A stretch of 64,000 nt of DNA, from positions 124,001-188,000 of the IMG/VR virus record IMGVR_UViG_3300035156_000206. One strand, given 5' to 3'. This document shows, piece by piece, positions 25,556 through 62,977 of the stretch. A model generated the notes under the pieces. That model worked only from the letters and a program-made list of their open reading frames with translations. It searched no databases and was not told where the DNA came from. Positions within the stretch are counted from its first letter, which is position 1. Every line of letters starts with the position of its first letter. Made by a program: the position numbers and the translations under genes.

Positions 25556-25584
25556 TTGACATCGGTTGTGTTCTAGTCTAGGAT
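25556..25584 (+). promoter_or_regulatory. Sigma70-type promoter for gp47/gp46
   Basis: TTGACA-17 bp-TAGGAT. Confidence 0.7.
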
Positions 25585-25618
25585 GTGGAGCGTACACATA
25601 TCCTGTAACTTGAGACCT

Positions 25619-26719
25619 ATGATCCTAAACAATACACATCCCGAAACAGTTGCTTTGTTCAAGAAATTGAAGAAGGCTGCTGCATTCACTGATATCCACT
25701 TCGGCAAGAAGGGAAACTCAGATCAACACAATCAAGACTGCTTGGATTCTATCACCTGGTTCTGTGAACAGGTGCGTAAGGATCCAACGATCGATCACAT
25801 AGTTGTACCAGGTGACTGGCATGAACTGCGTTCGTCACTCAGCATCAACACGATGGATTACTCTCTCCGTGGTGCTGAACTATTAAGCACTCTCGGTATC
25901 CCAATCATCATCACTATCGGCAACCACGATCTGTTTCACCGTGATAGCCGTACGATGTATTCCACTATCATGTTCAAGCACATCCCCAACATCTATCTGG
26001 TGCCTGAGCCAGTAGTGATGGAGTTGAAGCACGGTCCAACATTGTTTGCACCATTCCTGTTCTCTGATGAGTACCCAGGTCTGGTGAAGCATGCAGCTGT
26101 GCCAGTATGGTGGGGACACTTTGAGTTTAAAGGCTTCGTCATCAGTGGATACAACACGAAGATGGAACACGGTCCAGAACATGGCGACTTCAGTGGACCA
26201 AAGCGGATCTTCAGTGGCCACTTTCACAAGCGCCAAATTCAAGACAACATCGTCTATATCGGCAATGCCTTCCCTATGGATTTCTCTGATGCTGGAGACT
26301 TTGCACGGGGCATGGCAGTGTATGACTACAAACACGATGAGCTGGAGTTTATTGACTGGCCAGGCTGTCCGAAGTACGTTAAGGCAAAGCTGTCACAATT
26401 CCTTGACGAGACCGCTGCCATCCCTGCGAACTCACGTGTGCGTTGCATCATTGATGTGCCGCTGACGTACGAAGAGAGCATTATCATCAAGCAGACATTC
26501 CTGGTTCAGTATGAACTTCGTGAGCTGCGCCTTGAAGAGTCAGATGAGTTGACAGACGTCCTAACCAACACCGAGACAGGGGAGATCATGGAGAACCCAG
26601 AAGGCCGATTGAATACTGTCGATGAGCTGGTTGTTCAGATGCTTGGTGCAATCGACACTCCTAAGATTGATCAGGCCATGCTTGTCAATCTGTACCAAAA
26701 ATTACAATCGGAGGGATGA
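25619..26719 (+). CDS. Recombination nuclease, Mre11/SbcD-like (T4 gp47)
   Basis: Motifs TDIHFG, GDW, GNHD, GHFE, SGHFH, YIGN. Confidence 0.92.
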   Translation: MILNNTHPETVALFKKLKKAAAFTDIHFGKKGNSDQHNQDCLDSITWFCEQVRKDPTIDHIVVPGDWHELRSSLSINTMDYSLRGAELLSTLGIPIIITIGNHDLFHRDSRTMYSTIMFKHIPNIYLVPEPVVMELKHGPTLFAPFLFSDEYPGLVKHAAVPVWWGHFEFKGFVISGYNTKMEHGPEHGDFSGPKRIFSGHFHKRQIQDNIVYIGNAFPMDFSDAGDFARGMAVYDYKHDELEFIDWPGCPKYVKAKLSQFLDETAAIPANSRVRCIIDVPLTYEESIIIKQTFLVQYELRELRLEESDELTDVLTNTETGEIMENPEGRLNTVDELVVQMLGAIDTPKIDQAMLVNLYQKLQSEG

Positions 26720-26720
26720 T

Positions 26721-26897
26721 ATGACATTTGATGACTATGTAGCGGCCGTGGATGTTTGGGTGCTGGAAGTGTTCACCACAGGATTGGACCATGACGATCT
26801 GGAGTACGTTATGGCTATGATGGATATTAAGATGTTACCCGAGTCGTGTGCTGCGGAAGTTGTTAAACAAAGAATGAAAGAGTGTGAAGATGATTGA
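26721..26897 (+). CDS. Small acidic hypothetical protein
   Basis: GGAGGG RBS; fills the gap between gp47 and gp46. Confidence 0.6.
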   Translation: MTFDDYVAAVDVWVLEVFTTGLDHDDLEYVMAMMDIKMLPESCAAEVVKQRMKECEDD

Positions 26898-29394
26898 TAG
26901 TACCGATATGTTAGAATTACTGGAGCTGCGCATGCGCAACTTCCTATCGTATGGCAACAACTATACGATCATCGACCTGACGACACCTGGCACCACTCTG
27001 ATCGTGGGAGAAGACTTGGATAGTGGTACCGGGTCAGCAAACGGTGTTGGTAAGACGACCATCCTCAATGGCATCGTCTATGGCTTATATGATAAGCCAC
27101 TGTCGAAAGAGATCAAGCTCGACCACCTGATCAACAACATCAACAAGAAGAATATGGAAGTGTCTCTGACCTTCCGCAAGCATGGTGATACATTTGTTGT
27201 TACGCGCTTCCGCAAGGGCAAGGACGGCAACACTGTCATCCTGACCAAGAATGGTACCGCTATCACGCGTGACAGCGTAGACCAGACTAACAAGTTCATC
27301 GAGACGGTGATTGGTTACTCATACGACCTGTTCGTCCGCATTGTTGTGTTCTCTGCAGGACACGATGCATTCTTAGACTTGCCTACGTCTGGGGCAAAGA
27401 AGCCTCTTCAATCAGACATCATGGAAGAGCTGTTCGACTTAACGTCACTGACGGAAAAGGCCGAGCGCGCCAAGAAAGAGATCAAGGCCAATGAGCAGCG
27501 CATGGAAGTTATCAAGGCTCAGATTGAACAGATCGAGCGTGAAGCTGAACGCCACGCTGCACAGATTGCAACCACACGCCGGCTAATCGGTGAATGGGAT
27601 GTTACACAGACAGGTAAGATTGCTCGACTCAAGGCTGAACTGGCTACTCTGGAAGGGATCGACTTCGAGAAGGAGCAACGACTCCACAAAGAGTTAGAGG
27701 CAAAGAAGCCGGCTCGCAAGGCATTGTGGGATGCGCGTGATCGTGCAGTCACGTGGGAAGCTTCTCACCAGATGAAGACGCTGCGTGTGATGAAGGATCT
27801 CAAGAAGCTTGATGGGATTGACTTCGACGCACAGTTGGAACTGCATCGTCAGTTGAAGCATGCCACGCAGCGCCACAAAGAGTTAGCCAGCACCTTCAAG
27901 CAGTACTCCAGCTTTGAAGAGACCAATAGTCTCAAGCTGTCATCTCTGGCCAAAGAAATCCAATCAATGGCCGATGTGGACTTTGATGCTGAGAAGGCTA
28001 TCTTTACCCATTTGGCCGATAAGCAAGCATCTCTGAAGACCCTCAACACAGAGTTAGAAGAGATCGTCAGGGTCAAGGGTGAGAACTTAGTCACCTATGA
28101 AAAACTGAACACAGAGTCGAAGCACCTGTTCGATGCTACCTGTCCGTACTGTTTGCAGAACTTTGCAGGTGCTAAGGAGAAGGGTGAGAAGATTGGTGAT
28201 CAGCTAACTGAGCTGCAGGGTGGTCTCAAGAAGCACGACAGTAAGATCACAAAGACCAATAAGGCAATCTCTGCACTGGCTGAAGAGATTGAGGCACTCA
28301 AAGGTAAGGCGATCGTTAAGTCCTTGGCGGATCTGGTCAAGATGCAATCTGATAAAGAGTCACTGGATTGTCGTTATGCTGATGCAAGTGATGCAGTCAA
28401 TCCTCATGCGGTAGCCCTGCAAGAGCTGATGCAATCGGACAAAATTGAATCTGACCAAGTTGAGTTGGACATTGCAGAACTTGCTACAAAGATCAAGGCC
28501 CGTAAGGACTGCATTACTGTGGATGACGCTGATGAGCTCGCTCAGATGAAATCAGATAGCGTCTCATTGAAGGCTCGCTTGGAGGAGCTGACGGAGGAAG
28601 CTAATCCGTACCTCAAGGAGATCAATGCACTTGGTGTGAAGATCAAAGCGACCGATGACATCTTGGAGGTATGTGATCCAATCATTAATCGACTGACCAG
28701 TGAGATCAAGGACATCGAGGATCAGATTACAGTGGATGACATTGAGGACTTGTTGGAGACAAAGAACAACAGTGCCACAATGGAAGCCAGGATCAAGGAG
28801 ATGTCAACAGAGGCCAATCCATACGAGACTACTTTGGCGGAGTTGGAAGCGGTTGAGTTGGATGAGGCAAAGTATGATTTCATCAACGAGATGACTAAGG
28901 TAGTGGATCACCACAAGTTCCTGGTCAAGCTGTTGACAAAATCTGACAGCTTTGTTCGGAAACAACTGATCGCTGAGAATATTCCGTTCCTAAATAAACA
29001 ACTGCGTGAGAATCTGAAGGACTTAGGATTGCCACACCGTGTAGAGTTTACTGATACCATGTCAGCATCGATCTCGCAGTTGGGTCGTCCTTTAGAGTTT
29101 GGTAACCTGTCTCGTGGTCAGAAGGCACGTGTGAACTTGGCACTAGCTTGGGCATTCCACGATGTTCTACAAAGCATGCACGGGCCCGTCAATTTCTGTT
29201 TACTTGATGAGGTGCTTGATGTAGGATTGTGTTCAGTAGGAGTCATTATGGCTGCGAAGATGTTGAAGAACAGAGCGAAGCGTGACAAGTTGACGATGTT
29301 CATCATCTCACACAAGCAGGAAGTGGACAGTATCTTCGATCGTACAATGAAGATTCAGTTGCACAAGGGCTTCTCCAAGATTGCTACAGAGTAA
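26884..29394 (+). CDS. Recombination ATPase, Rad50/SbcC-like (T4 gp46)
   Basis: NFLSYGN, Walker A NGVGKT, CPYC zinc hook, LSRGQ signature, LLDEVLD, ISH. Confidence 0.93.
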   Translation: MKMIDSTDMLELLELRMRNFLSYGNNYTIIDLTTPGTTLIVGEDLDSGTGSANGVGKTTILNGIVYGLYDKPLSKEIKLDHLINNINKKNMEVSLTFRKHGDTFVVTRFRKGKDGNTVILTKNGTAITRDSVDQTNKFIETVIGYSYDLFVRIVVFSAGHDAFLDLPTSGAKKPLQSDIMEELFDLTSLTEKAERAKKEIKANEQRMEVIKAQIEQIEREAERHAAQIATTRRLIGEWDVTQTGKIARLKAELATLEGIDFEKEQRLHKELEAKKPARKALWDARDRAVTWEASHQMKTLRVMKDLKKLDGIDFDAQLELHRQLKHATQRHKELASTFKQYSSFEETNSLKLSSLAKEIQSMADVDFDAEKAIFTHLADKQASLKTLNTELEEIVRVKGENLVTYEKLNTESKHLFDATCPYCLQNFAGAKEKGEKIGDQLTELQGGLKKHDSKITKTNKAISALAEEIEALKGKAIVKSLADLVKMQSDKESLDCRYADASDAVNPHAVALQELMQSDKIESDQVELDIAELATKIKARKDCITVDDADELAQMKSDSVSLKARLEELTEEANPYLKEINALGVKIKATDDILEVCDPIINRLTSEIKDIEDQITVDDIEDLLETKNNSATMEARIKEMSTEANPYETTLAELEAVELDEAKYDFINEMTKVVDHHKFLVKLLTKSDSFVRKQLIAENIPFLNKQLRENLKDLGLPHRVEFTDTMSASISQLGRPLEFGNLSRGQKARVNLALAWAFHDVLQSMHGPVNFCLLDEVLDVGLCSVGVIMAAKMLKNRAKRDKLTMFIISHKQEVDSIFDRTMKIQLHKGFSKIATE

Positions 29395-30445: not shown

Positions 30446-30931
30446 ATGATTATCTTAGGCATCGATCAATCTTACACCAGCTCAGGTTTAGTTGTTGTGG
30501 ACGGCGATAAATTGTTGTACAGTGGCGTCTTTAAGACGCCCAAGGACATGGACATCTTCGAACGCGCTTGGCGCATCGGTGAACATGTACTAGAAAAGAT
30601 AGAAGAATTCGGTGTCGAGGCGGTTGCGATTGAAGGTCTTGCTTTTGGTATGACTGGAAACGCTACGCGAGACCTAGCAGGACTACAGTTTGTGATTGTA
30701 TCGAAGATCCAGTTTGTTGCTGGAAAGCTCGTTGCTGTCATATCACCAAAGTCTCTGAAAGTGTTCGCGACGGCTAATGGTAAGGCAACGAAGAAAGAGA
30801 TGATTGCTGCAGTACCCGAGGATGTAAATTCTATTTTCAAGGGTCAGGGGTATAAACTAACGACAGGTCTTGCTGACTTATCGGATGCTTATTTCCTGGC
30901 GCAATATATCAAGAAGCAGGATACAAATTAA
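30446..30931 (+). CDS. ruvC: RuvC-like Holliday junction resolvase
   Basis: ILGIDQS, AIEG, NGKATK, DLSDAY catalytic motifs; AGGAG RBS; late promoter. Confidence 0.88.
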   Translation: MIILGIDQSYTSSGLVVVDGDKLLYSGVFKTPKDMDIFERAWRIGEHVLEKIEEFGVEAVAIEGLAFGMTGNATRDLAGLQFVIVSKIQFVAGKLVAVISPKSLKVFATANGKATKKEMIAAVPEDVNSIFKGQGYKLTTGLADLSDAYFLAQYIKKQDTN

Positions 30932-30940
30932 GTTGCGAGA

Positions 30941-31192
30941 TGTTGACCCGTGTAGTGCGGGTGAAAACCTTCGGGTATGACATTGTGGACGCAATACGAA
31001 TGATGGATGTGCGCAACATCCGGTACTAGCTCGTATTGTGGGTCCCACTAAATTGGTTATGCAACCGCGAGCGTAGGGATACAAGCAGCGCGAGACCATA
31101 TCCATCTAGCCACTCCTGCGAGTGATAGTTAAACATCTCCTGACCATTGGGGTATGACAGTATGCCTGTCCGGCCCGCACCCACGGTCGATA
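30941..31192 (+). ncRNA. Putative structured non-coding RNA of unknown class
   Basis: Long-range stem 30941-30962/31173-31192; ACC-UUCG-GGU tetraloop; nested stems GCAATACGA/TCGTATTGT, GGATGT/ACATCC, CACTC/GAGTG, GACAG/CTGTC; several G-U pairs; no credible ORF. Confidence 0.55.
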
Positions 31193-31243
31193 GGGGGATT
31201 GTTTCATTGTTTGAATTAATTGATAGTCGGCAATCAAGATAGA

Positions 31244-31434
31244 TTAACTGATCGAATATCTGAGGACGAACGCAGTGAGGACGAAGATGGAGATCAGATG
31301 AGGCGAAGCCGAGTTAAATGATTCAACCGGTTCTTTTGCAGCTAGCTGGATTATGTGTCTGTCGTTACACTCCAGACTTAATATAGATGATTGTGAAACT
31401 CGCTACGCTCGCCATCACAATCATCTATATTAAG
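31244..31434. repeat. ssDNA-type hairpin cluster with a 20-bp perfect inverted repeat (31377-31396/31415-31434)
   Basis: GNA-triloop hairpins closed by tandem GA/GA pairs on both strands; arms CTTAATATAGATGATTGTGA / TCACAATCATCTATATTAAG. Confidence 0.75.
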
Positions 31435-31436
31435 GG

Positions 31437-31631
31437 TTATTTTAATCGGCCGTGTTCTGTGAGTACTTTGGATTCAGCAATATCGTACTCTATTCGAGCC
31501 TTTTCCGATTCAGCTGATGCAACTGCCAACTGAGCTTCCGCTTTCGCCAATGTATCTTCCACAGATGGTTCAGATTGGCTTCCACCACAAGCAACCAAAC
31601 ACAATAGTACTAGAACTGGTAGCGTCTTCAT
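31437..31631 (-). CDS. Small putative lipoprotein
   Basis: MKTLPVLVLLCLVA-CGG lipobox; ATGA overlap with the upstream gene. Confidence 0.65.
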   Translation of the reverse strand: MKTLPVLVLLCLVACGGSQSEPSVEDTLAKAEAQLAVASAESEKARIEYDIAESKVLTEHGRLK

Positions 31632-32350
31632 TGTACTGACTCCAACGATAAGTGTTTGTCCTCAACCGTCTTGGCATAGTCATACAACTTCTCAATATAC
31701 TTGTCACGACGCAGAATTTTGAATGCCAGGTTCTCAACCGAGAACTCACCGTCACGATCCAAGCCCATCTTCCTCATCTCTCGCAATCGGGTTTTTAATT
31801 TCTCGATCGTAGTGAGATTACACACTTTATTATGGATTATCCCGTCGATAGACGATTTCCATTTATCTGCCTTACTGATTACATACGAGTCGTTAATTTC
31901 GGGATTGGATTTCTTAGGCTTGACCAACCACTTGTTCCTCATAATGCTATACACACCTGACGATACATGAGGTTCCTTCTCACCTTGGACATACAACTCA
32001 ACGGGGAAGCCTTTGATCTTGATATCATGCTCAAGGTTCCATAGCTGCTTCTTAGCGTTGAATAGCTCCAAAGCTACCTCTTCATTCTCACAGCGTGACA
32101 AGTCTGCCATGATGTGAAGATCGACGTCTGACTGATCGTGCCACGTATAGTTGGCGAGACTCCCAGTTACAATCATATCAACCACAATTAGTTCACTTGA
32201 GTCCACAAAGTCGATGAACTGTTTTGCAATCGACTTCAGTGCAGTCTTAATCTCGGGCTTCATGACGGTCTCTTCCCATACAGCATGGTTGAGGTGACGC
32301 TTCTCATCAAGAGCGAACGCTGTTTCATTCAGGTATTGTTTAAATTTCAT
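31628..32350 (-). CDS. Pol-beta superfamily nucleotidyltransferase
   Basis: TGSLANY...SDVDLH (GS..DxD), VELYVQ; late promoter; MKFKQYLNE N-terminus. Confidence 0.75.
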   Translation of the reverse strand: MKFKQYLNETAFALDEKRHLNHAVWEETVMKPEIKTALKSIAKQFIDFVDSSELIVVDMIVTGSLANYTWHDQSDVDLHIMADLSRCENEEVALELFNAKKQLWNLEHDIKIKGFPVELYVQGEKEPHVSSGVYSIMRNKWLVKPKKSNPEINDSYVISKADKWKSSIDGIIHNKVCNLTTIEKLKTRLREMRKMGLDRDGEFSVENLAFKILRRDKYIEKLYDYAKTVEDKHLSLESVQ

Positions 32351-32394
32351 TTGGATTATCCTTGTGTGCATCCTATTTATGGTACAGACAAAAG

Positions 32395-32424
32395 AAAAGG
32401 AAGGTTGTTTCCAACCTTCCTTTT
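32395..32424. terminator. Terminator hairpin
   Basis: aaaaggaaggttg-tttc-caaccttcctttt. Confidence 0.7.
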
Positions 32425-41815: not shown

Positions 41816-41840
41816 TCGCAGTAACAGTTGGAAAACAAAA

Positions 41841-41874
41841 AGCCCTCTTCGGAGGGCTTTTTTATTGTCTGGTG
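41841..41874 (+). terminator. Terminator; left copy of a 33/34-bp direct repeat
   Basis: agccctc-TTCG-gagggc-T6-attgtctggtg. Confidence 0.85.
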
Positions 41875-62921: not shown

Positions 62922-62977
62922 CAAGTTGTTCCCTAGATGGGTCACACTAAATACAGTGATCTATTTAGGGAACACTA

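What the first reader, a model, noticed from the sequence alone, without database searches (positions are those of the whole stretch)
30932..31436. Bipartite 500-bp non-coding element: RNA-like fold, G-tract, then DNA-specific hairpins (candidate R-loop origin or new ncRNA/ssDNA element)
Seen: this is the largest ORF-free gap in the window. The 5' half (30941-31192) folds like an RNA, with a long closing stem, a cUUCGg tetraloop, nested stems with G-U pairs and a repeated GGGTATGACA. It ends at a G5 tract (31193-31197) followed by an AT-rich stretch. The 3' half uses DNA-specific folding motifs (see the next finding). Established: ColE1 and T4 origins prime replication from a persistent RNA-DNA hybrid, and in ColE1 this depends on a folded primer RNA, a G-tract and RNase H. 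Inference: a folded primer RNA nucleates an R-loop and the displaced strand folds into primase/helicase loading hairpins. Alternatives are a pac site, or an ncRNA acting with the flanking RuvC or nucleotidyltransferase.
Basis: partly seen in the sequence, partly recalled or inferred. Interest (0 to 1): 0.85.

Follow-up and report, generated by a model that had tools for sequence, protein, structure and literature searches.

The report
Structured RNA plus DNA-hairpin module
The 505-base gap after this jumbo phage's ruvC gene is a conserved non-coding module, seen in 13 related phage contigs: a new folded RNA followed by small hairpins that fold on opposite DNA strands. It looks most like an unusual replication start site, but that is untested.

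Summary
The element is real and is not chance. The window is part of a 292-kb T4-like jumbo-phage contig. Twelve metagenomic relatives keep a 480-720 nt gene-free gap at the same place: after ruvC and before a convergent nucleotidyltransferase gene.

**5' half (30932-31197).** It is more conserved than the flanking genes and folds on the + strand only. It shows many G·U pairs, compensatory changes and a pseudoknot. No Rfam family matches it. I conclude it is a new structured RNA.

The "long closing stem" is not conserved. The G5 tract is one strand of the conserved pseudoknot.

**3' half.** After an AT-rich spacer there is a dyad-symmetric array of one small hairpin type: tandem sheared G·A, two pairs and a GNA or GNNA loop. 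Copies lie on the + strand at the left and on the - strand at the right. The array ends in a 16-22 bp perfect palindrome. The motif occurs 30 times against 0.8 expected. An RNA read from one strand cannot use hairpins that fold on both strands.

**Verdict.** The best reading, at about 0.4, is a transcription-activated origin: a folded RNA plus single-strand initiation hairpins. The main rival, at about 0.3, is a free-standing non-coding RNA gene. Function is untested.

The parts
30446..30931 (+). ruvC-like Holliday-junction resolvase gene. It is the invariant upstream neighbour of the element.
   Evidence: Pfam RuvC and phrog_159. It lies directly upstream in all 13 loci.
30932..31197 (+). 5' domain: structured RNA core of about 266 nt.
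   Evidence: In the alifold of 4 close relatives, 76 pairs are 97% paired, with 39 G·U cells, 0 A·C cells and 9 compensatory pairs. Energy is -68 on the + strand against -50 on the - strand. No Rfam match.
30940..30983 (+). Helix P1: 30940-30950 pairs with 30972-30983. It encloses one or two small hairpins, including the CCUUCGGG site.
   Evidence: U-A changes to C-G in L007. U·G changes to C-G in L009 and L012.
30985..31048 (+). Long hairpin P2: 30985-30999 pairs with 31031-31048. Its apical hairpin is 31004-31010 with 31016-31022.
   Evidence: Three pairs show double changes: C-G to A-U, U-A to C-G and C-G to U-A.
31054..31104 (+). Helix P3 (31054-61 with 31097-104). It encloses hairpin Ha (31066-69 with 31089-92), which has a 19-nt loop.
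   Evidence: G-C changes to A-U in 2 of 4 sequences. The counterpart hairpins in other clades covary strongly.
31156..31197 (+). Hairpin Hd (31156-60 with 31166-70), hairpin He (31171-75 with 31185-89), and a pseudoknot between CCC 31180-82 and the G5 tract 31193-97.
   Evidence: These are shared by all 13 loci. The fourth He pair is C-G, A-U or U·G. One pseudoknot pair is G-C in L007 and C-G in L009/L012. The model built from the other clades hits 31166-31197.
31198..31247 (.). AT-rich spacer with variable sequence.
   Evidence: GC is 0.15-0.40 in 10 of 13 loci, against 0.38-0.53 in the 5' domains. The sequence is not conserved.
31248..31297 (+). Large irregular hairpin. The outer stem is 31248-53 with 31292-97. 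The inner helix (31258-31288) has three tandem sheared G·A blocks alternating with single Watson-Crick pairs. The cap is C-GA-AC[GCA]GT-GA-G.
   Evidence: The isolated pairs covary: G-C/A-U 4:4, A-U/G-C and C-G/U-A. G·A blocks are replaced by Watson-Crick pairs in L054 and L055. The outer stem is fully compensated in other clades.
31300..31313 (+). Small hairpin GGC[GAA]GCC, which contains GCGAAGC.
   Evidence: It is AGC[GAA]GCT in L007. L015 and L055 have longer stems with the same GAA loop.
31339..31348 (.). Short palindrome CAGCTAGCTG near the dyad centre of the hairpin array.
   Evidence: Conserved in clade A. The midpoints of the inner and outer motif pairs coincide to within a few bases in most of the relatives checked, 7 in L017.
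31361..31373 (-). Mini-hairpin that folds on the minus strand: G-GA-GT[GTA]AC-GA-C.
   Evidence: It has the same design as the + strand cap. It is present in most relatives, and the middle loop base varies freely.
31377..31434 (.). Perfect 20-bp palindrome with an 18-nt loop. The loop (31399-31411) reads C-GA-GC[GTA]GC-GA-G on the minus strand.
   Evidence: It is the longest perfect inverted repeat in the window. In 8 relatives the best hairpin of the 3' half has 16-22 bp arms that are all Watson-Crick and unrelated in sequence. It is the terminal hairpin with the conserved loop motif in L007, L009, L012 and L054, and with a related loop in L015 and L055.
31435..31447 (+). T-rich tail after the palindrome, on the + strand only.
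   Evidence: Seen in most relatives. The terminator scan did not call it.
31628..32371 (-). Pol-beta-type nucleotidyltransferase gene. It is the conserved convergent downstream neighbour.
   Evidence: Pfam NTP_transf_2 and phrog_36119. It is syntenic in the ten relatives whose DNA reaches that far.

Best explanation
This is a cis-acting, two-part non-coding module. It is best read as a transcription-activated replication origin of a small clade of T4-like jumbo phages.

**Proposed mechanism**
1. Rightward transcription makes a folded RNA of about 270 nt, closed by a pseudoknot. The transcript is either read through from ruvC or, in some relatives, started from the element's own sigma-70-type promoter.
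2. Transcription then runs into an AT-rich, easily melted spacer.
3. Beyond the spacer is a dyad-symmetric array of one mini-hairpin type: a closing pair, tandem sheared G·A, two pairs and a GNA or GNNA loop. The left copies fold only on the top strand. The right copies fold only on the bottom strand.
4. Once the duplex is opened, each strand would display its own hairpins as single-strand initiation signals for primase or helicase loading. Synthesis would run outward from the centre, near 31335-31345.

**Shown**
- The RNA fold and its strand.
- The AT-rich spacer.
- The hairpin motif, its strand arrangement and its conservation.

**Inferred**
- That the hairpins act as single-stranded DNA.
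- That the RNA opens or primes the site.
- That replication starts here.
For: **Conservation and synteny**
- 13 loci keep the same order and orientation: ruvC, RNA, spacer, hairpin array.
- 80 more distant ruvC loci have neither the element nor a comparable gene-free gap after ruvC.

**The RNA folds on the + strand**
- Clade A: 110 pairs are 97.7% paired, against 32-40% when partners are slid. There are 50 G·U cells and 1 A·C cell.
- Other clades: covariation score 0.67 against 0.10 or less when slid, and 0 of 500 shuffles reach it.

**Promoter and spacer**
- Promoters matching 10 of 12 consensus positions end about 7 nt before the conserved 5' motif in L056 and L017.
- The spacer is AT-rich.

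**Hairpin motif**
- It occurs 30 times in 3.3 kb of 3' halves, against 0.77 in dinucleotide shuffles (maximum 4).
- With one sequence per clade the count is 11 against 0.21.
- The whole window has 0.27 per kb.
- In the eleven loci with copies on both strands, + strand copies always lie left of - strand copies, with symmetric spacing.
- The middle loop base takes all four values. GNNA loops break the RNA GNRA rule (GCCA, GCTA), which fits the DNA mini-hairpin rule (PMC13037366).

**Against a convergent-transcript explanation**
Clade B keeps the - strand copies although its next gene is on the + strand. So they are not simply the 3' UTR of a convergent operon.

**Terminal palindrome**
It has 16-22 bp arms that are all Watson-Crick with no G·U, whereas 13% of 5'-domain pairs are G·U.

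**Literature**
- Mini-hairpins of this type occur at the G4 and St-1 complementary-strand origins and in RSF1010 ssiA (PMC13037366).
- T4 oriF and oriG each consist of a promoter plus an AT-rich unwinding element (PMC3016281).
Against: - There is no experimental or coverage evidence for replication starting here.
- There is no GC-skew extremum at the locus within 64 kb, and the whole genome was not available.
- The site lies between convergent genes. The more active T4 origins lie near points of transcriptional divergence (PMC3016281).
- No T4 or ColE1 precedent explains so elaborate an RNA core. In other clades it has a conserved 17-nt loop and an 8-nt loop.
- T4 R-loop formation needs no specific sequence (PMC3016281).
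- The G tract is paired within the RNA.
- No iterons or initiator gene were identified.
- The window itself has no recognisable promoter for the RNA.
- In clade C the spacer is not AT-rich, at 0.40-0.53 GC.
Confidence: 0.4

Rival explanations
1. It is a free-standing gene for a new large structured non-coding RNA of about 270 nt, or about 500 nt if the 3' hairpins are included. The RNA would act as a protein-binding scaffold, a decoy or a ribozyme. The 3' array would then serve only as its 3' protective or terminator region.
For: - The RNA core has many covarying helices, a pseudoknot and large conserved loops.
- It has its own promoter in L056 and L017.
- A T-rich tail follows the terminal hairpin on the + strand only.
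- The GA hairpin and the GAA hairpin fold on the + strand and adjoin the core.
- Phages are known to carry large RNAs of unknown function, such as GOLLD and ROOL (PMC12286853).
Against: - It does not explain hairpins that fold only on the minus strand, their dyad symmetry, or their retention in clade B where no convergent gene adjoins them.
- Stems of only 2 bp, and GNNA loops with a pyrimidine at the third position, are weak as RNA (PMC13037366).
- The terminal hairpin is unlike this phage's ordinary terminators.
Confidence: 0.3
2. It is an ordinary 3' UTR of ruvC plus a terminator region shared with the convergent operon. On this view it is conserved only for mRNA stability and termination.
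For: - In clades A, B and D the element starts within about 10 nt of the ruvC stop.
- Where a convergent minus-strand gene follows, the terminal hairpin lies within about 0-17 nt of its stop.
- A perfect Watson-Crick stem would suit termination in both directions.
Against: - About 270 nt of covarying helices with conserved loops is far more than a stabiliser needs.
- There is no U tract for the minus strand.
- The terminator scan does not call the hairpin.
- The phage's real terminators are short GC stems with A and T tracts.
- The loop sequence is conserved while the stem is not.
Confidence: 0.08
3. It is a programmed cruciform or break site. The long perfect palindrome would extrude and be cut by the adjacent RuvC-like resolvase or the SbcCD-like nuclease. 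The resulting ends would start recombination-dependent replication or packaging.
For: - The longest perfect palindrome of the window lies next to genes for a junction resolvase and a palindrome-specific nuclease.
- The arms are perfect in most relatives although their sequences differ completely.
Against: - It explains neither the RNA core nor the + strand hairpins.
- L017 and L056 lack a long palindrome, and in L013 and L014 it is short or imperfect.
- The gene adjacency may simply reflect gene order.
Confidence: 0.07
4. It is a packaging (pac) site, or the binding array of some other DNA-binding protein.
For: It has repeated short motifs and is unique within the 64-kb window.
Against: - The terminase gene is 30 kb away.
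- The motifs follow hairpin logic rather than duplex logic. The loop base varies freely, G·A blocks are swapped for Watson-Crick pairs, and stems covary.
Confidence: 0.04

Closest known systems
ColE1-type origin (RNA II pre-primer followed by a primosome assembly hairpin site)
   Same: A promoter lies some hundreds of nt upstream. A folded RNA is transcribed toward the site. A G-rich tract closes the folded part. Hairpins on the displaced strand follow downstream.
   Different: Here the G tract is paired inside an RNA pseudoknot. No antisense RNA I equivalent was seen. Hairpins lie on both strands in a symmetric array. The host is a T4-like jumbo phage, not a plasmid. There is no sequence or Rfam similarity.
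Phage T4 oriF / oriG (promoter plus AT-rich downstream unwinding element, with an R-loop primer)
   Same: A T4-like phage. Transcription runs into an AT-rich segment. The locus is near recombination genes.
   Different: T4 origins are about 100 bp and need no folded RNA or hairpin array, and their R-loops are not sequence-specific (PMC3016281). Here about 270 nt of structured RNA separate the start from the AT-rich part. The locus sits between convergent genes.
Single-strand initiation signals: RSF1010 oriV ssiA/ssiB and the G4 / St-1 complementary-strand origins
   Same: These are strand-specific hairpins capped by C-GNA-G or GNNA mini-hairpins. RSF1010 oriV carries two such signals, ssiA and ssiB (PMC13037366). 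From memory, these lie on opposite strands next to an AT-rich segment.
   Different: The motif here adds tandem sheared G·A pairs and is repeated two or three times. No RepB'-like or other dedicated primase has been linked to it. Nothing is known about priming in this phage.
Large ornate phage-associated RNAs (GOLLD, ROOL)
   Same: These are large, multi-helix RNAs carried by phages, with conserved loops, pseudoknots and unknown function.
   Different: There is no match to their Rfam models. This RNA is much rarer, with 13 loci found. It is tied to a fixed gene neighbourhood and to a DNA-hairpin array.
TnpB / IS607 reRNA (omega RNA) encoded just downstream of a RuvC-domain nuclease gene
   Same: A conserved structured RNA lies downstream of a gene with a RuvC fold (PMC11061315). 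Here the RNA starts at or just after that gene's stop and ends in a pseudoknot followed by variable sequence.
   Different: The protein here is a 161-aa canonical junction resolvase with no extra domains. No target for the variable stretch exists in the window. There are no transposon ends.

Membership tests
Any Rfam 15 RNA family | A covariance-model match at or near the gathering score | tested here: not met
   The whole window gave 0 hits at gathering score. The region searched at E up to 10 gave only a 10.5-bit C/D-box match against a cut-off of 38. Six relatives gave nothing inside the element.
tRNA / tmRNA | ARAGORN detection | tested here: not met
   0 genes in the window.
ColE1-type RNA II origin | A promoter that drives a folded pre-primer RNA toward the origin | tested here: inconclusive
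   Promoters matching 10 of 12 positions lie in L056 and L017. None is seen in the window. The folded RNA is confirmed.
ColE1-type RNA II origin | A free G-rich RNA tract that pairs with template DNA to make a persistent hybrid | tested here: not met
   The G tract 31193-97 pairs with CCC 31180-82 in a pseudoknot kept in all 13 loci. L007 and L009 differ by a G-C to C-G change.
ColE1-type RNA II origin | RNase H processing, and an antisense RNA I regulator | not testable with these tools
   There are no expression or cleavage data.
T4 oriF/oriG-type R-loop origin | A promoter immediately followed by an AT-rich unwinding element within about 100 bp | tested here: not met
   An AT-rich segment exists, but it lies about 270 nt after the RNA start. 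No MotA-type promoter was recognised.
T4 oriF/oriG-type R-loop origin | Location at a switch of transcription strand with a shift in compositional skew | tested here: inconclusive
   A local strand switch exists, but it is convergent. There is no skew extremum on the 64-kb scale. The whole genome was not available.
Single-strand initiation (ssi) signals | Strand-specific hairpins capped by GNA/GNNA mini-hairpins closed by C-G | tested here: met
   The motif occurs 30 times in 13 loci against 0.77 expected. The loop base N varies freely.
Single-strand initiation (ssi) signals | Signals on opposite strands that flank an initiation zone | tested here: met
   In the eleven loci with copies on both strands, + strand copies lie left of - strand copies, and the spacing is dyad-symmetric.
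Single-strand initiation (ssi) signals | Recognition by a primase or helicase loader, and primer synthesis | not testable with these tools
   This needs biochemistry.
Rho-independent terminator | A short GC-rich stem with a small loop, followed by a U tract | tested here: inconclusive
   The terminal hairpin has a 20-bp AT-rich stem and an 18-nt loop. It has a T-rich tail on the + strand only and is not called by the scan.
TnpB/IscB-type RNA-guided nuclease with omega RNA | A large multi-domain RuvC nuclease, plus an RNA whose variable end matches a target | tested here: not met
   The RuvC is a 161-aa canonical resolvase. The 20 nt after the pseudoknot have no second match in the window.
Retron (msr-msd) | An adjacent reverse transcriptase gene | tested here: not met
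   Pfam and PHROG scans found no reverse transcriptase domain in the ten ORFs scanned between 25583 and 36575.

The most novel reading that the evidence does not exclude
The folded RNA is a partner of the small RuvC-like resolvase encoded immediately upstream. On this reading the RNA would direct or regulate a minimal 161-aa junction nuclease. One possible target is the adjacent hairpin and palindrome array. That would be a free-standing analogue, or an evolutionary cousin, of the TnpB/IscB nuclease-plus-RNA arrangement.
Probability: 0.03. Interest if true: 0.95.

Novelty: new variant of a known kind. Interest (0 to 1): 0.7.

Why it matters
**If the origin reading holds.** This would be the first phage origin that joins a ColE1-like folded RNA to RSF1010- or G4-like single-strand initiation hairpins placed symmetrically on both strands. 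It would offer a way to study how T4-like jumbo phages start replication, which is largely unknown.

**If the RNA-only reading holds.** It is a new large structured RNA class with a pseudoknot and big conserved loops. RNAs of that kind have repeatedly turned out to be ribozymes or unusual assemblies.

**In either case.** The hairpin design of a closing pair, tandem sheared G·A, two pairs and a GNA loop is used on both strands. I did not find it among the natural mini-hairpin examples in the one review I consulted, so it may be a new recurring natural module. The element also shows that comparison across metagenomic contigs can find function where single-sequence folding statistics do not.

Tried and rejected
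- **Coding or pseudogene reading.** Every frame has mixed stop codons. The ORF that starts in the conserved 5' motif varies from 17 to 68 aa, loses its start codon in L007, and is absent from clades B and D.
- **Known RNA families, tRNA, tmRNA.** No matches.
- **Similarity to GenBank phages.** None at DNA level. The flanking proteins are below 41% identical to those of cultured phages.
- **IMG/VR.** Only the window's own contig carries the element.
- **Motif scans.** A second motif scan of IMG/VR and a scan of GTDB genomes gave only chance hits.
- **More distant ruvC loci.** 80 loci from JGI metagenomes lack the element. Most have no gap after ruvC. Those with a nucleotidyltransferase gene nearby fill the space with ORFs.
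- **Cyanophage S-CRM01.** Its nucleotidyltransferase homologue has no such neighbour.
- **Covariance model from clades B-D.** It recognises only the hairpin-pseudoknot end of the window's copy, at E = 0.39. So the middle of the RNA differs between clades.
- **Long-range pairings.** Two candidates do not covary convincingly: 31067-79 with loop 31400-12, and 31146-61 with 31357-73.
- **Nucleotidyltransferase.** It has no solved-structure or curated-family match that suggests an RNA link.
- **Guide-like function of the variable spacer.** No second match in the window.
- **Second copies.** None in the window.
- **DNA-parameter folding.** It is uninformative here, because nearest-neighbour rules lack terms for sheared G·A and GNA loops.
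Full report
**Setting**

The window is part of IMGVR_UViG_3300035156_000206, a 291,967-bp viral contig. Its genes identify a T4-like jumbo myovirus. They include baseplate wedge and hub, portal, major head protein, sheath, tube and large terminase.

The finding lies between two converging gene sets.
- On the + strand: an SbcD/SbcC-like pair (25583-29394), three small ORFs and a RuvC-like resolvase (30446-30931).
- On the - strand: a 64-aa lipoprotein-like ORF (31437-31631), a Pol-beta-type nucleotidyltransferase (31628-32371) and a baseplate hub gene.

**Checking the observation**

The gap is the largest gene-free stretch of the window at gene level. All six frames carry mixed stop codons.

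The single-sequence fold of the 5' half is not better than chance: z = -0.6. The z of about -3 for the whole gap comes from one 20-bp perfect hairpin. Folding energy alone therefore proves nothing, and the test had to be comparative.

**Relatives**

Nothing similar exists in GenBank phages at DNA level. In IMG/VR only the window's own contig carries it.

Protein searches with RuvC and with the nucleotidyltransferase found metagenomic relatives in which both genes sit on the same contigs. Fetching those contigs gave 12 further distinct loci. Wherever the contig reaches far enough, a gene-free gap of 480-720 nt lies after ruvC and before the nucleotidyltransferase gene.

The small gene next to the element varies between loci:
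- a lipoprotein-like ORF in the window;
- a 172- or 185-aa ORF in L007 and L009;
- a + strand 75-aa ORF in L013 and L014;
- no gene at all in L015 and L018.

The loci form four groups plus one singleton:
- clade A: the window, L007, L009, L012;
- clade B: L013, L014, L054;
- clade C: L016, L017, L056;
- clade D: L015, L055;
- L018 on its own.

Eighty more distant ruvC loci, at 55% protein identity or less, lack the element. Most have no gap after ruvC.

**The 5' half is a structured RNA on the + strand**

Within clade A the 5' half is 83-86% identical. That compares with 76-78% for ruvC and the nucleotidyltransferase gene at DNA level.

RNAalifold on the four clade A sequences gives 110 pairs.
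- 97.7% of cells are paired, against 32-40% when the partners are slid.
- 13 pairs show compensatory double changes.
- 50 cells are G·U and only 1 is A·C.
- The consensus energy is -96.9 on the + strand and -73.1 on the - strand.

In the other clades two hairpins with large conserved loops covary strongly. One loop is UGGAAUAA and the other is the 17-nt CUAACYNCAUCAAUG. The covariation score is 0.67 against 0.10 or less when slid. No shuffle out of 500 reaches it, and 10 of 15 pairs show double changes.

All 13 loci share the 3' end of this domain.
- It has a small hairpin, then a 5-bp hairpin whose fourth pair is C-G, A-U or U·G.
- Its loop pairs with the downstream G run to form a pseudoknot. 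One pseudoknot pair is G-C in L007 and C-G in L009 and L012.
- A covariance model built only from clades B-D finds this part of the window, but only weakly (31166-31197, E = 0.39). The middle of the RNA therefore differs between clades.

The 'long closing stem' is not conserved, because its 3' strand belongs to the 5-bp hairpin. The G5 tract is a pseudoknot strand.

No conserved ORF lies inside the element. No Rfam family, tRNA or tmRNA matches it.

In L056 and L017 a sigma-70-type promoter ends about 7 nt before the conserved 5' motif GAAAUGUUGA. Its hexamers are TTGCAA or TTGCTA, then 17-18 nt, then TATAAT, matching 10 of 12 consensus positions. In the window no promoter is recognisable. The RNA starts a few bases after the ruvC stop, so it is probably read through from ruvC.

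**The spacer**

After the G run comes a stretch whose sequence is not conserved. It is AT-rich in 10 of 13 loci, at 0.15-0.40 GC over 60 nt. Clade C is the exception.

**The 3' half is an array of one hairpin type on both strands**

*Plus-strand hairpins.* The first structure (31248-31297) is a long irregular hairpin on the + strand.
- Its inner helix alternates single Watson-Crick pairs with three tandem sheared G·A blocks.
- Its cap is C-GCA-G.
- The isolated pairs covary: G-C/A-U 4:4, A-U/G-C and C-G/U-A.
- In L054 and L055 a G·A block is replaced by Watson-Crick pairs.
- The outer stem is fully compensated between clades.

A second + strand hairpin, GGC[GAA]GCC (31300-31313), also covaries.

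*Minus-strand hairpins.* Further right, the conserved + strand word GUCGCUNCGCUCC makes no structure on the + strand. Read on the minus strand it is G-GA-GC[GNA]GC-GA-C, which is the same design as the + strand cap. It occurs at 31361-31373. It occurs again inside the loop of the terminal palindrome, at 31399-31411.

*Motif counts.* I scanned for the strict motif: tandem G·A, two pairs, a GNA or GNNA loop, two pairs, tandem G·A.
- It occurs 30 times in the 3,346 nt of the thirteen 3' halves. In 28 of the 30 a further pair closes it.
- Dinucleotide shuffles give 0.77 on average, with a maximum of 4.
- With one sequence per clade the count is 11 against 0.21.
- The whole 64-kb window has 17 on both strands, three of them in the element.

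*Arrangement.* In the eleven loci with copies on both strands the + strand copies lie to the left and the - strand copies to the right. The midpoints of the inner and outer motif pairs coincide to within a few bases (7 in L017) in the nine relatives and the window checked.

*Loop rule.* The middle loop base takes all four values. The four-base loops include GCCA and GCTA. This is the rule for DNA mini-hairpins (GCGNAGC and GCGNNAGC, N being any base). Their RNA versions are much less stable (PMC13037366).

*Terminal palindrome.* In the window and eight relatives the best hairpin of the 3' half has perfect arms of 16-22 bp with no G·U, although the arm sequences are unrelated. In the window, L007, L009, L012 and L054 it is the terminal hairpin with the conserved loop motif, and L015 and L055 carry a related loop. 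It is the longest perfect inverted repeat of the window. It does not resemble the phage's ordinary terminators.

*Independence from the neighbouring gene.* Clade B keeps the minus-strand hairpins although its next gene is on the + strand. So they are not simply the 3' UTR of a convergent operon.

**Interpretation**

Two statements are well supported.
1. The 5' half is a new structured RNA read from the + strand.
2. The 3' half is built to fold on both strands, which an RNA from one strand cannot exploit.

Mini-hairpins of this kind are known from the primase start sites of phages G4 and St-1, from ssiA of the RSF1010 origin, and from phage N4 hairpin promoters (PMC13037366). T4 origins oriF and oriG consist of a promoter followed by an AT-rich unwinding element in which the transcript forms an R-loop (PMC3016281).

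The most economical reading of the conserved order is a transcription-activated, bidirectional origin. That order is promoter or read-through, folded RNA, AT-rich spacer, + strand hairpins, centre, then - strand hairpins. The G tract is not the R-loop nucleator. The hairpins serve both strands.

I give this reading about 0.4, for these reasons:
- nothing shows that replication starts here;
- the 64-kb skew profile has no extremum at the locus;
- the genes converge rather than diverge;
- the elaborate RNA core is not required by any known origin of this type.

**Rivals**

The main rival, at about 0.3, is a free-standing non-coding RNA gene whose 3' hairpins are only end structures. It explains the RNA core better and the minus-strand hairpins worse.

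Lesser rivals are:
- an ordinary 3' UTR and terminator region (0.08);
- a programmed cruciform or break site for the neighbouring RuvC and SbcCD-like nucleases (0.07);
- a pac site or other duplex binding array (0.04);
- an RNA partner of the small RuvC (0.03). For this last one I found no target for the variable spacer in the window and no extra domains in the protein.

**Novelty**

The element is not in Rfam. A published catalogue of candidate structured RNAs from IMG/VR required at least three IMG/VR copies and reported motifs of 29-151 nt (PMC10690425). This element has one IMG/VR copy, so it is unlikely to be listed there.

I rate it a new variant of known kinds (RNA-activated origin, ssi hairpins, large phage RNA), not a member of any named family.

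Noticed in passing
L011:1-2767: In this relative the SbcC/gp46-like gene upstream of ruvC is over 1,200 aa and carries LAGLIDADG and Hom_end domain hits. That suggests an intein or homing-endonuclease insertion. The window's 836-aa copy (26884-29394) lacks it.
   Followed up: no
window:62922-63297: This is the second largest ORF-free gap (376 nt), just after the large-terminase gene. It begins with a 19-nt imperfect inverted repeat at 62927-62974.
   Followed up: no
window:31437-31631: A 64-aa minus-strand ORF with a lipobox and a weak Lpp/OprI alanine-zipper match. This slot between the element and the nucleotidyltransferase gene holds a different gene, or none, in relatives.
   Followed up: partly
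window:31067-31079 and 31400-31412: The loop of an RNA-core hairpin is 12/13 complementary to the loop of the terminal palindrome. The variable loop base does not covary in L007, L009 or L012, so a kissing contact is unproven.
   Followed up: partly
window:3507-3534, 32395-32424, 41837-41862: The phage's ordinary terminators are short GC stems flanked by A and T tracts, so they look bidirectional. They serve as a useful contrast to the element's 20-bp AT-rich palindrome.
   Followed up: no
L013:4307-4506: The minus-strand mini-hairpin is identical to the plus-strand copy, C-GA-AC[GAA]GT-GA-G. In addition, the 3' half weakly matches its own reverse complement. The array may have arisen by inverted duplication.
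   Followed up: partly
L016:3985-4146, L017:3982-4161: In clade C about 130-180 nt separate ruvC from the RNA. They include a called 53-59 aa ORF that overlaps the ruvC 3' end. In L017 and L056 they also include the RNA's own promoter.
   Followed up: no
window:7197-14963: A 2,588-aa minus-strand ORF matches only a 'virion structural protein' PHROG. No polymerase or other enzymatic domain was detected.
   Followed up: no
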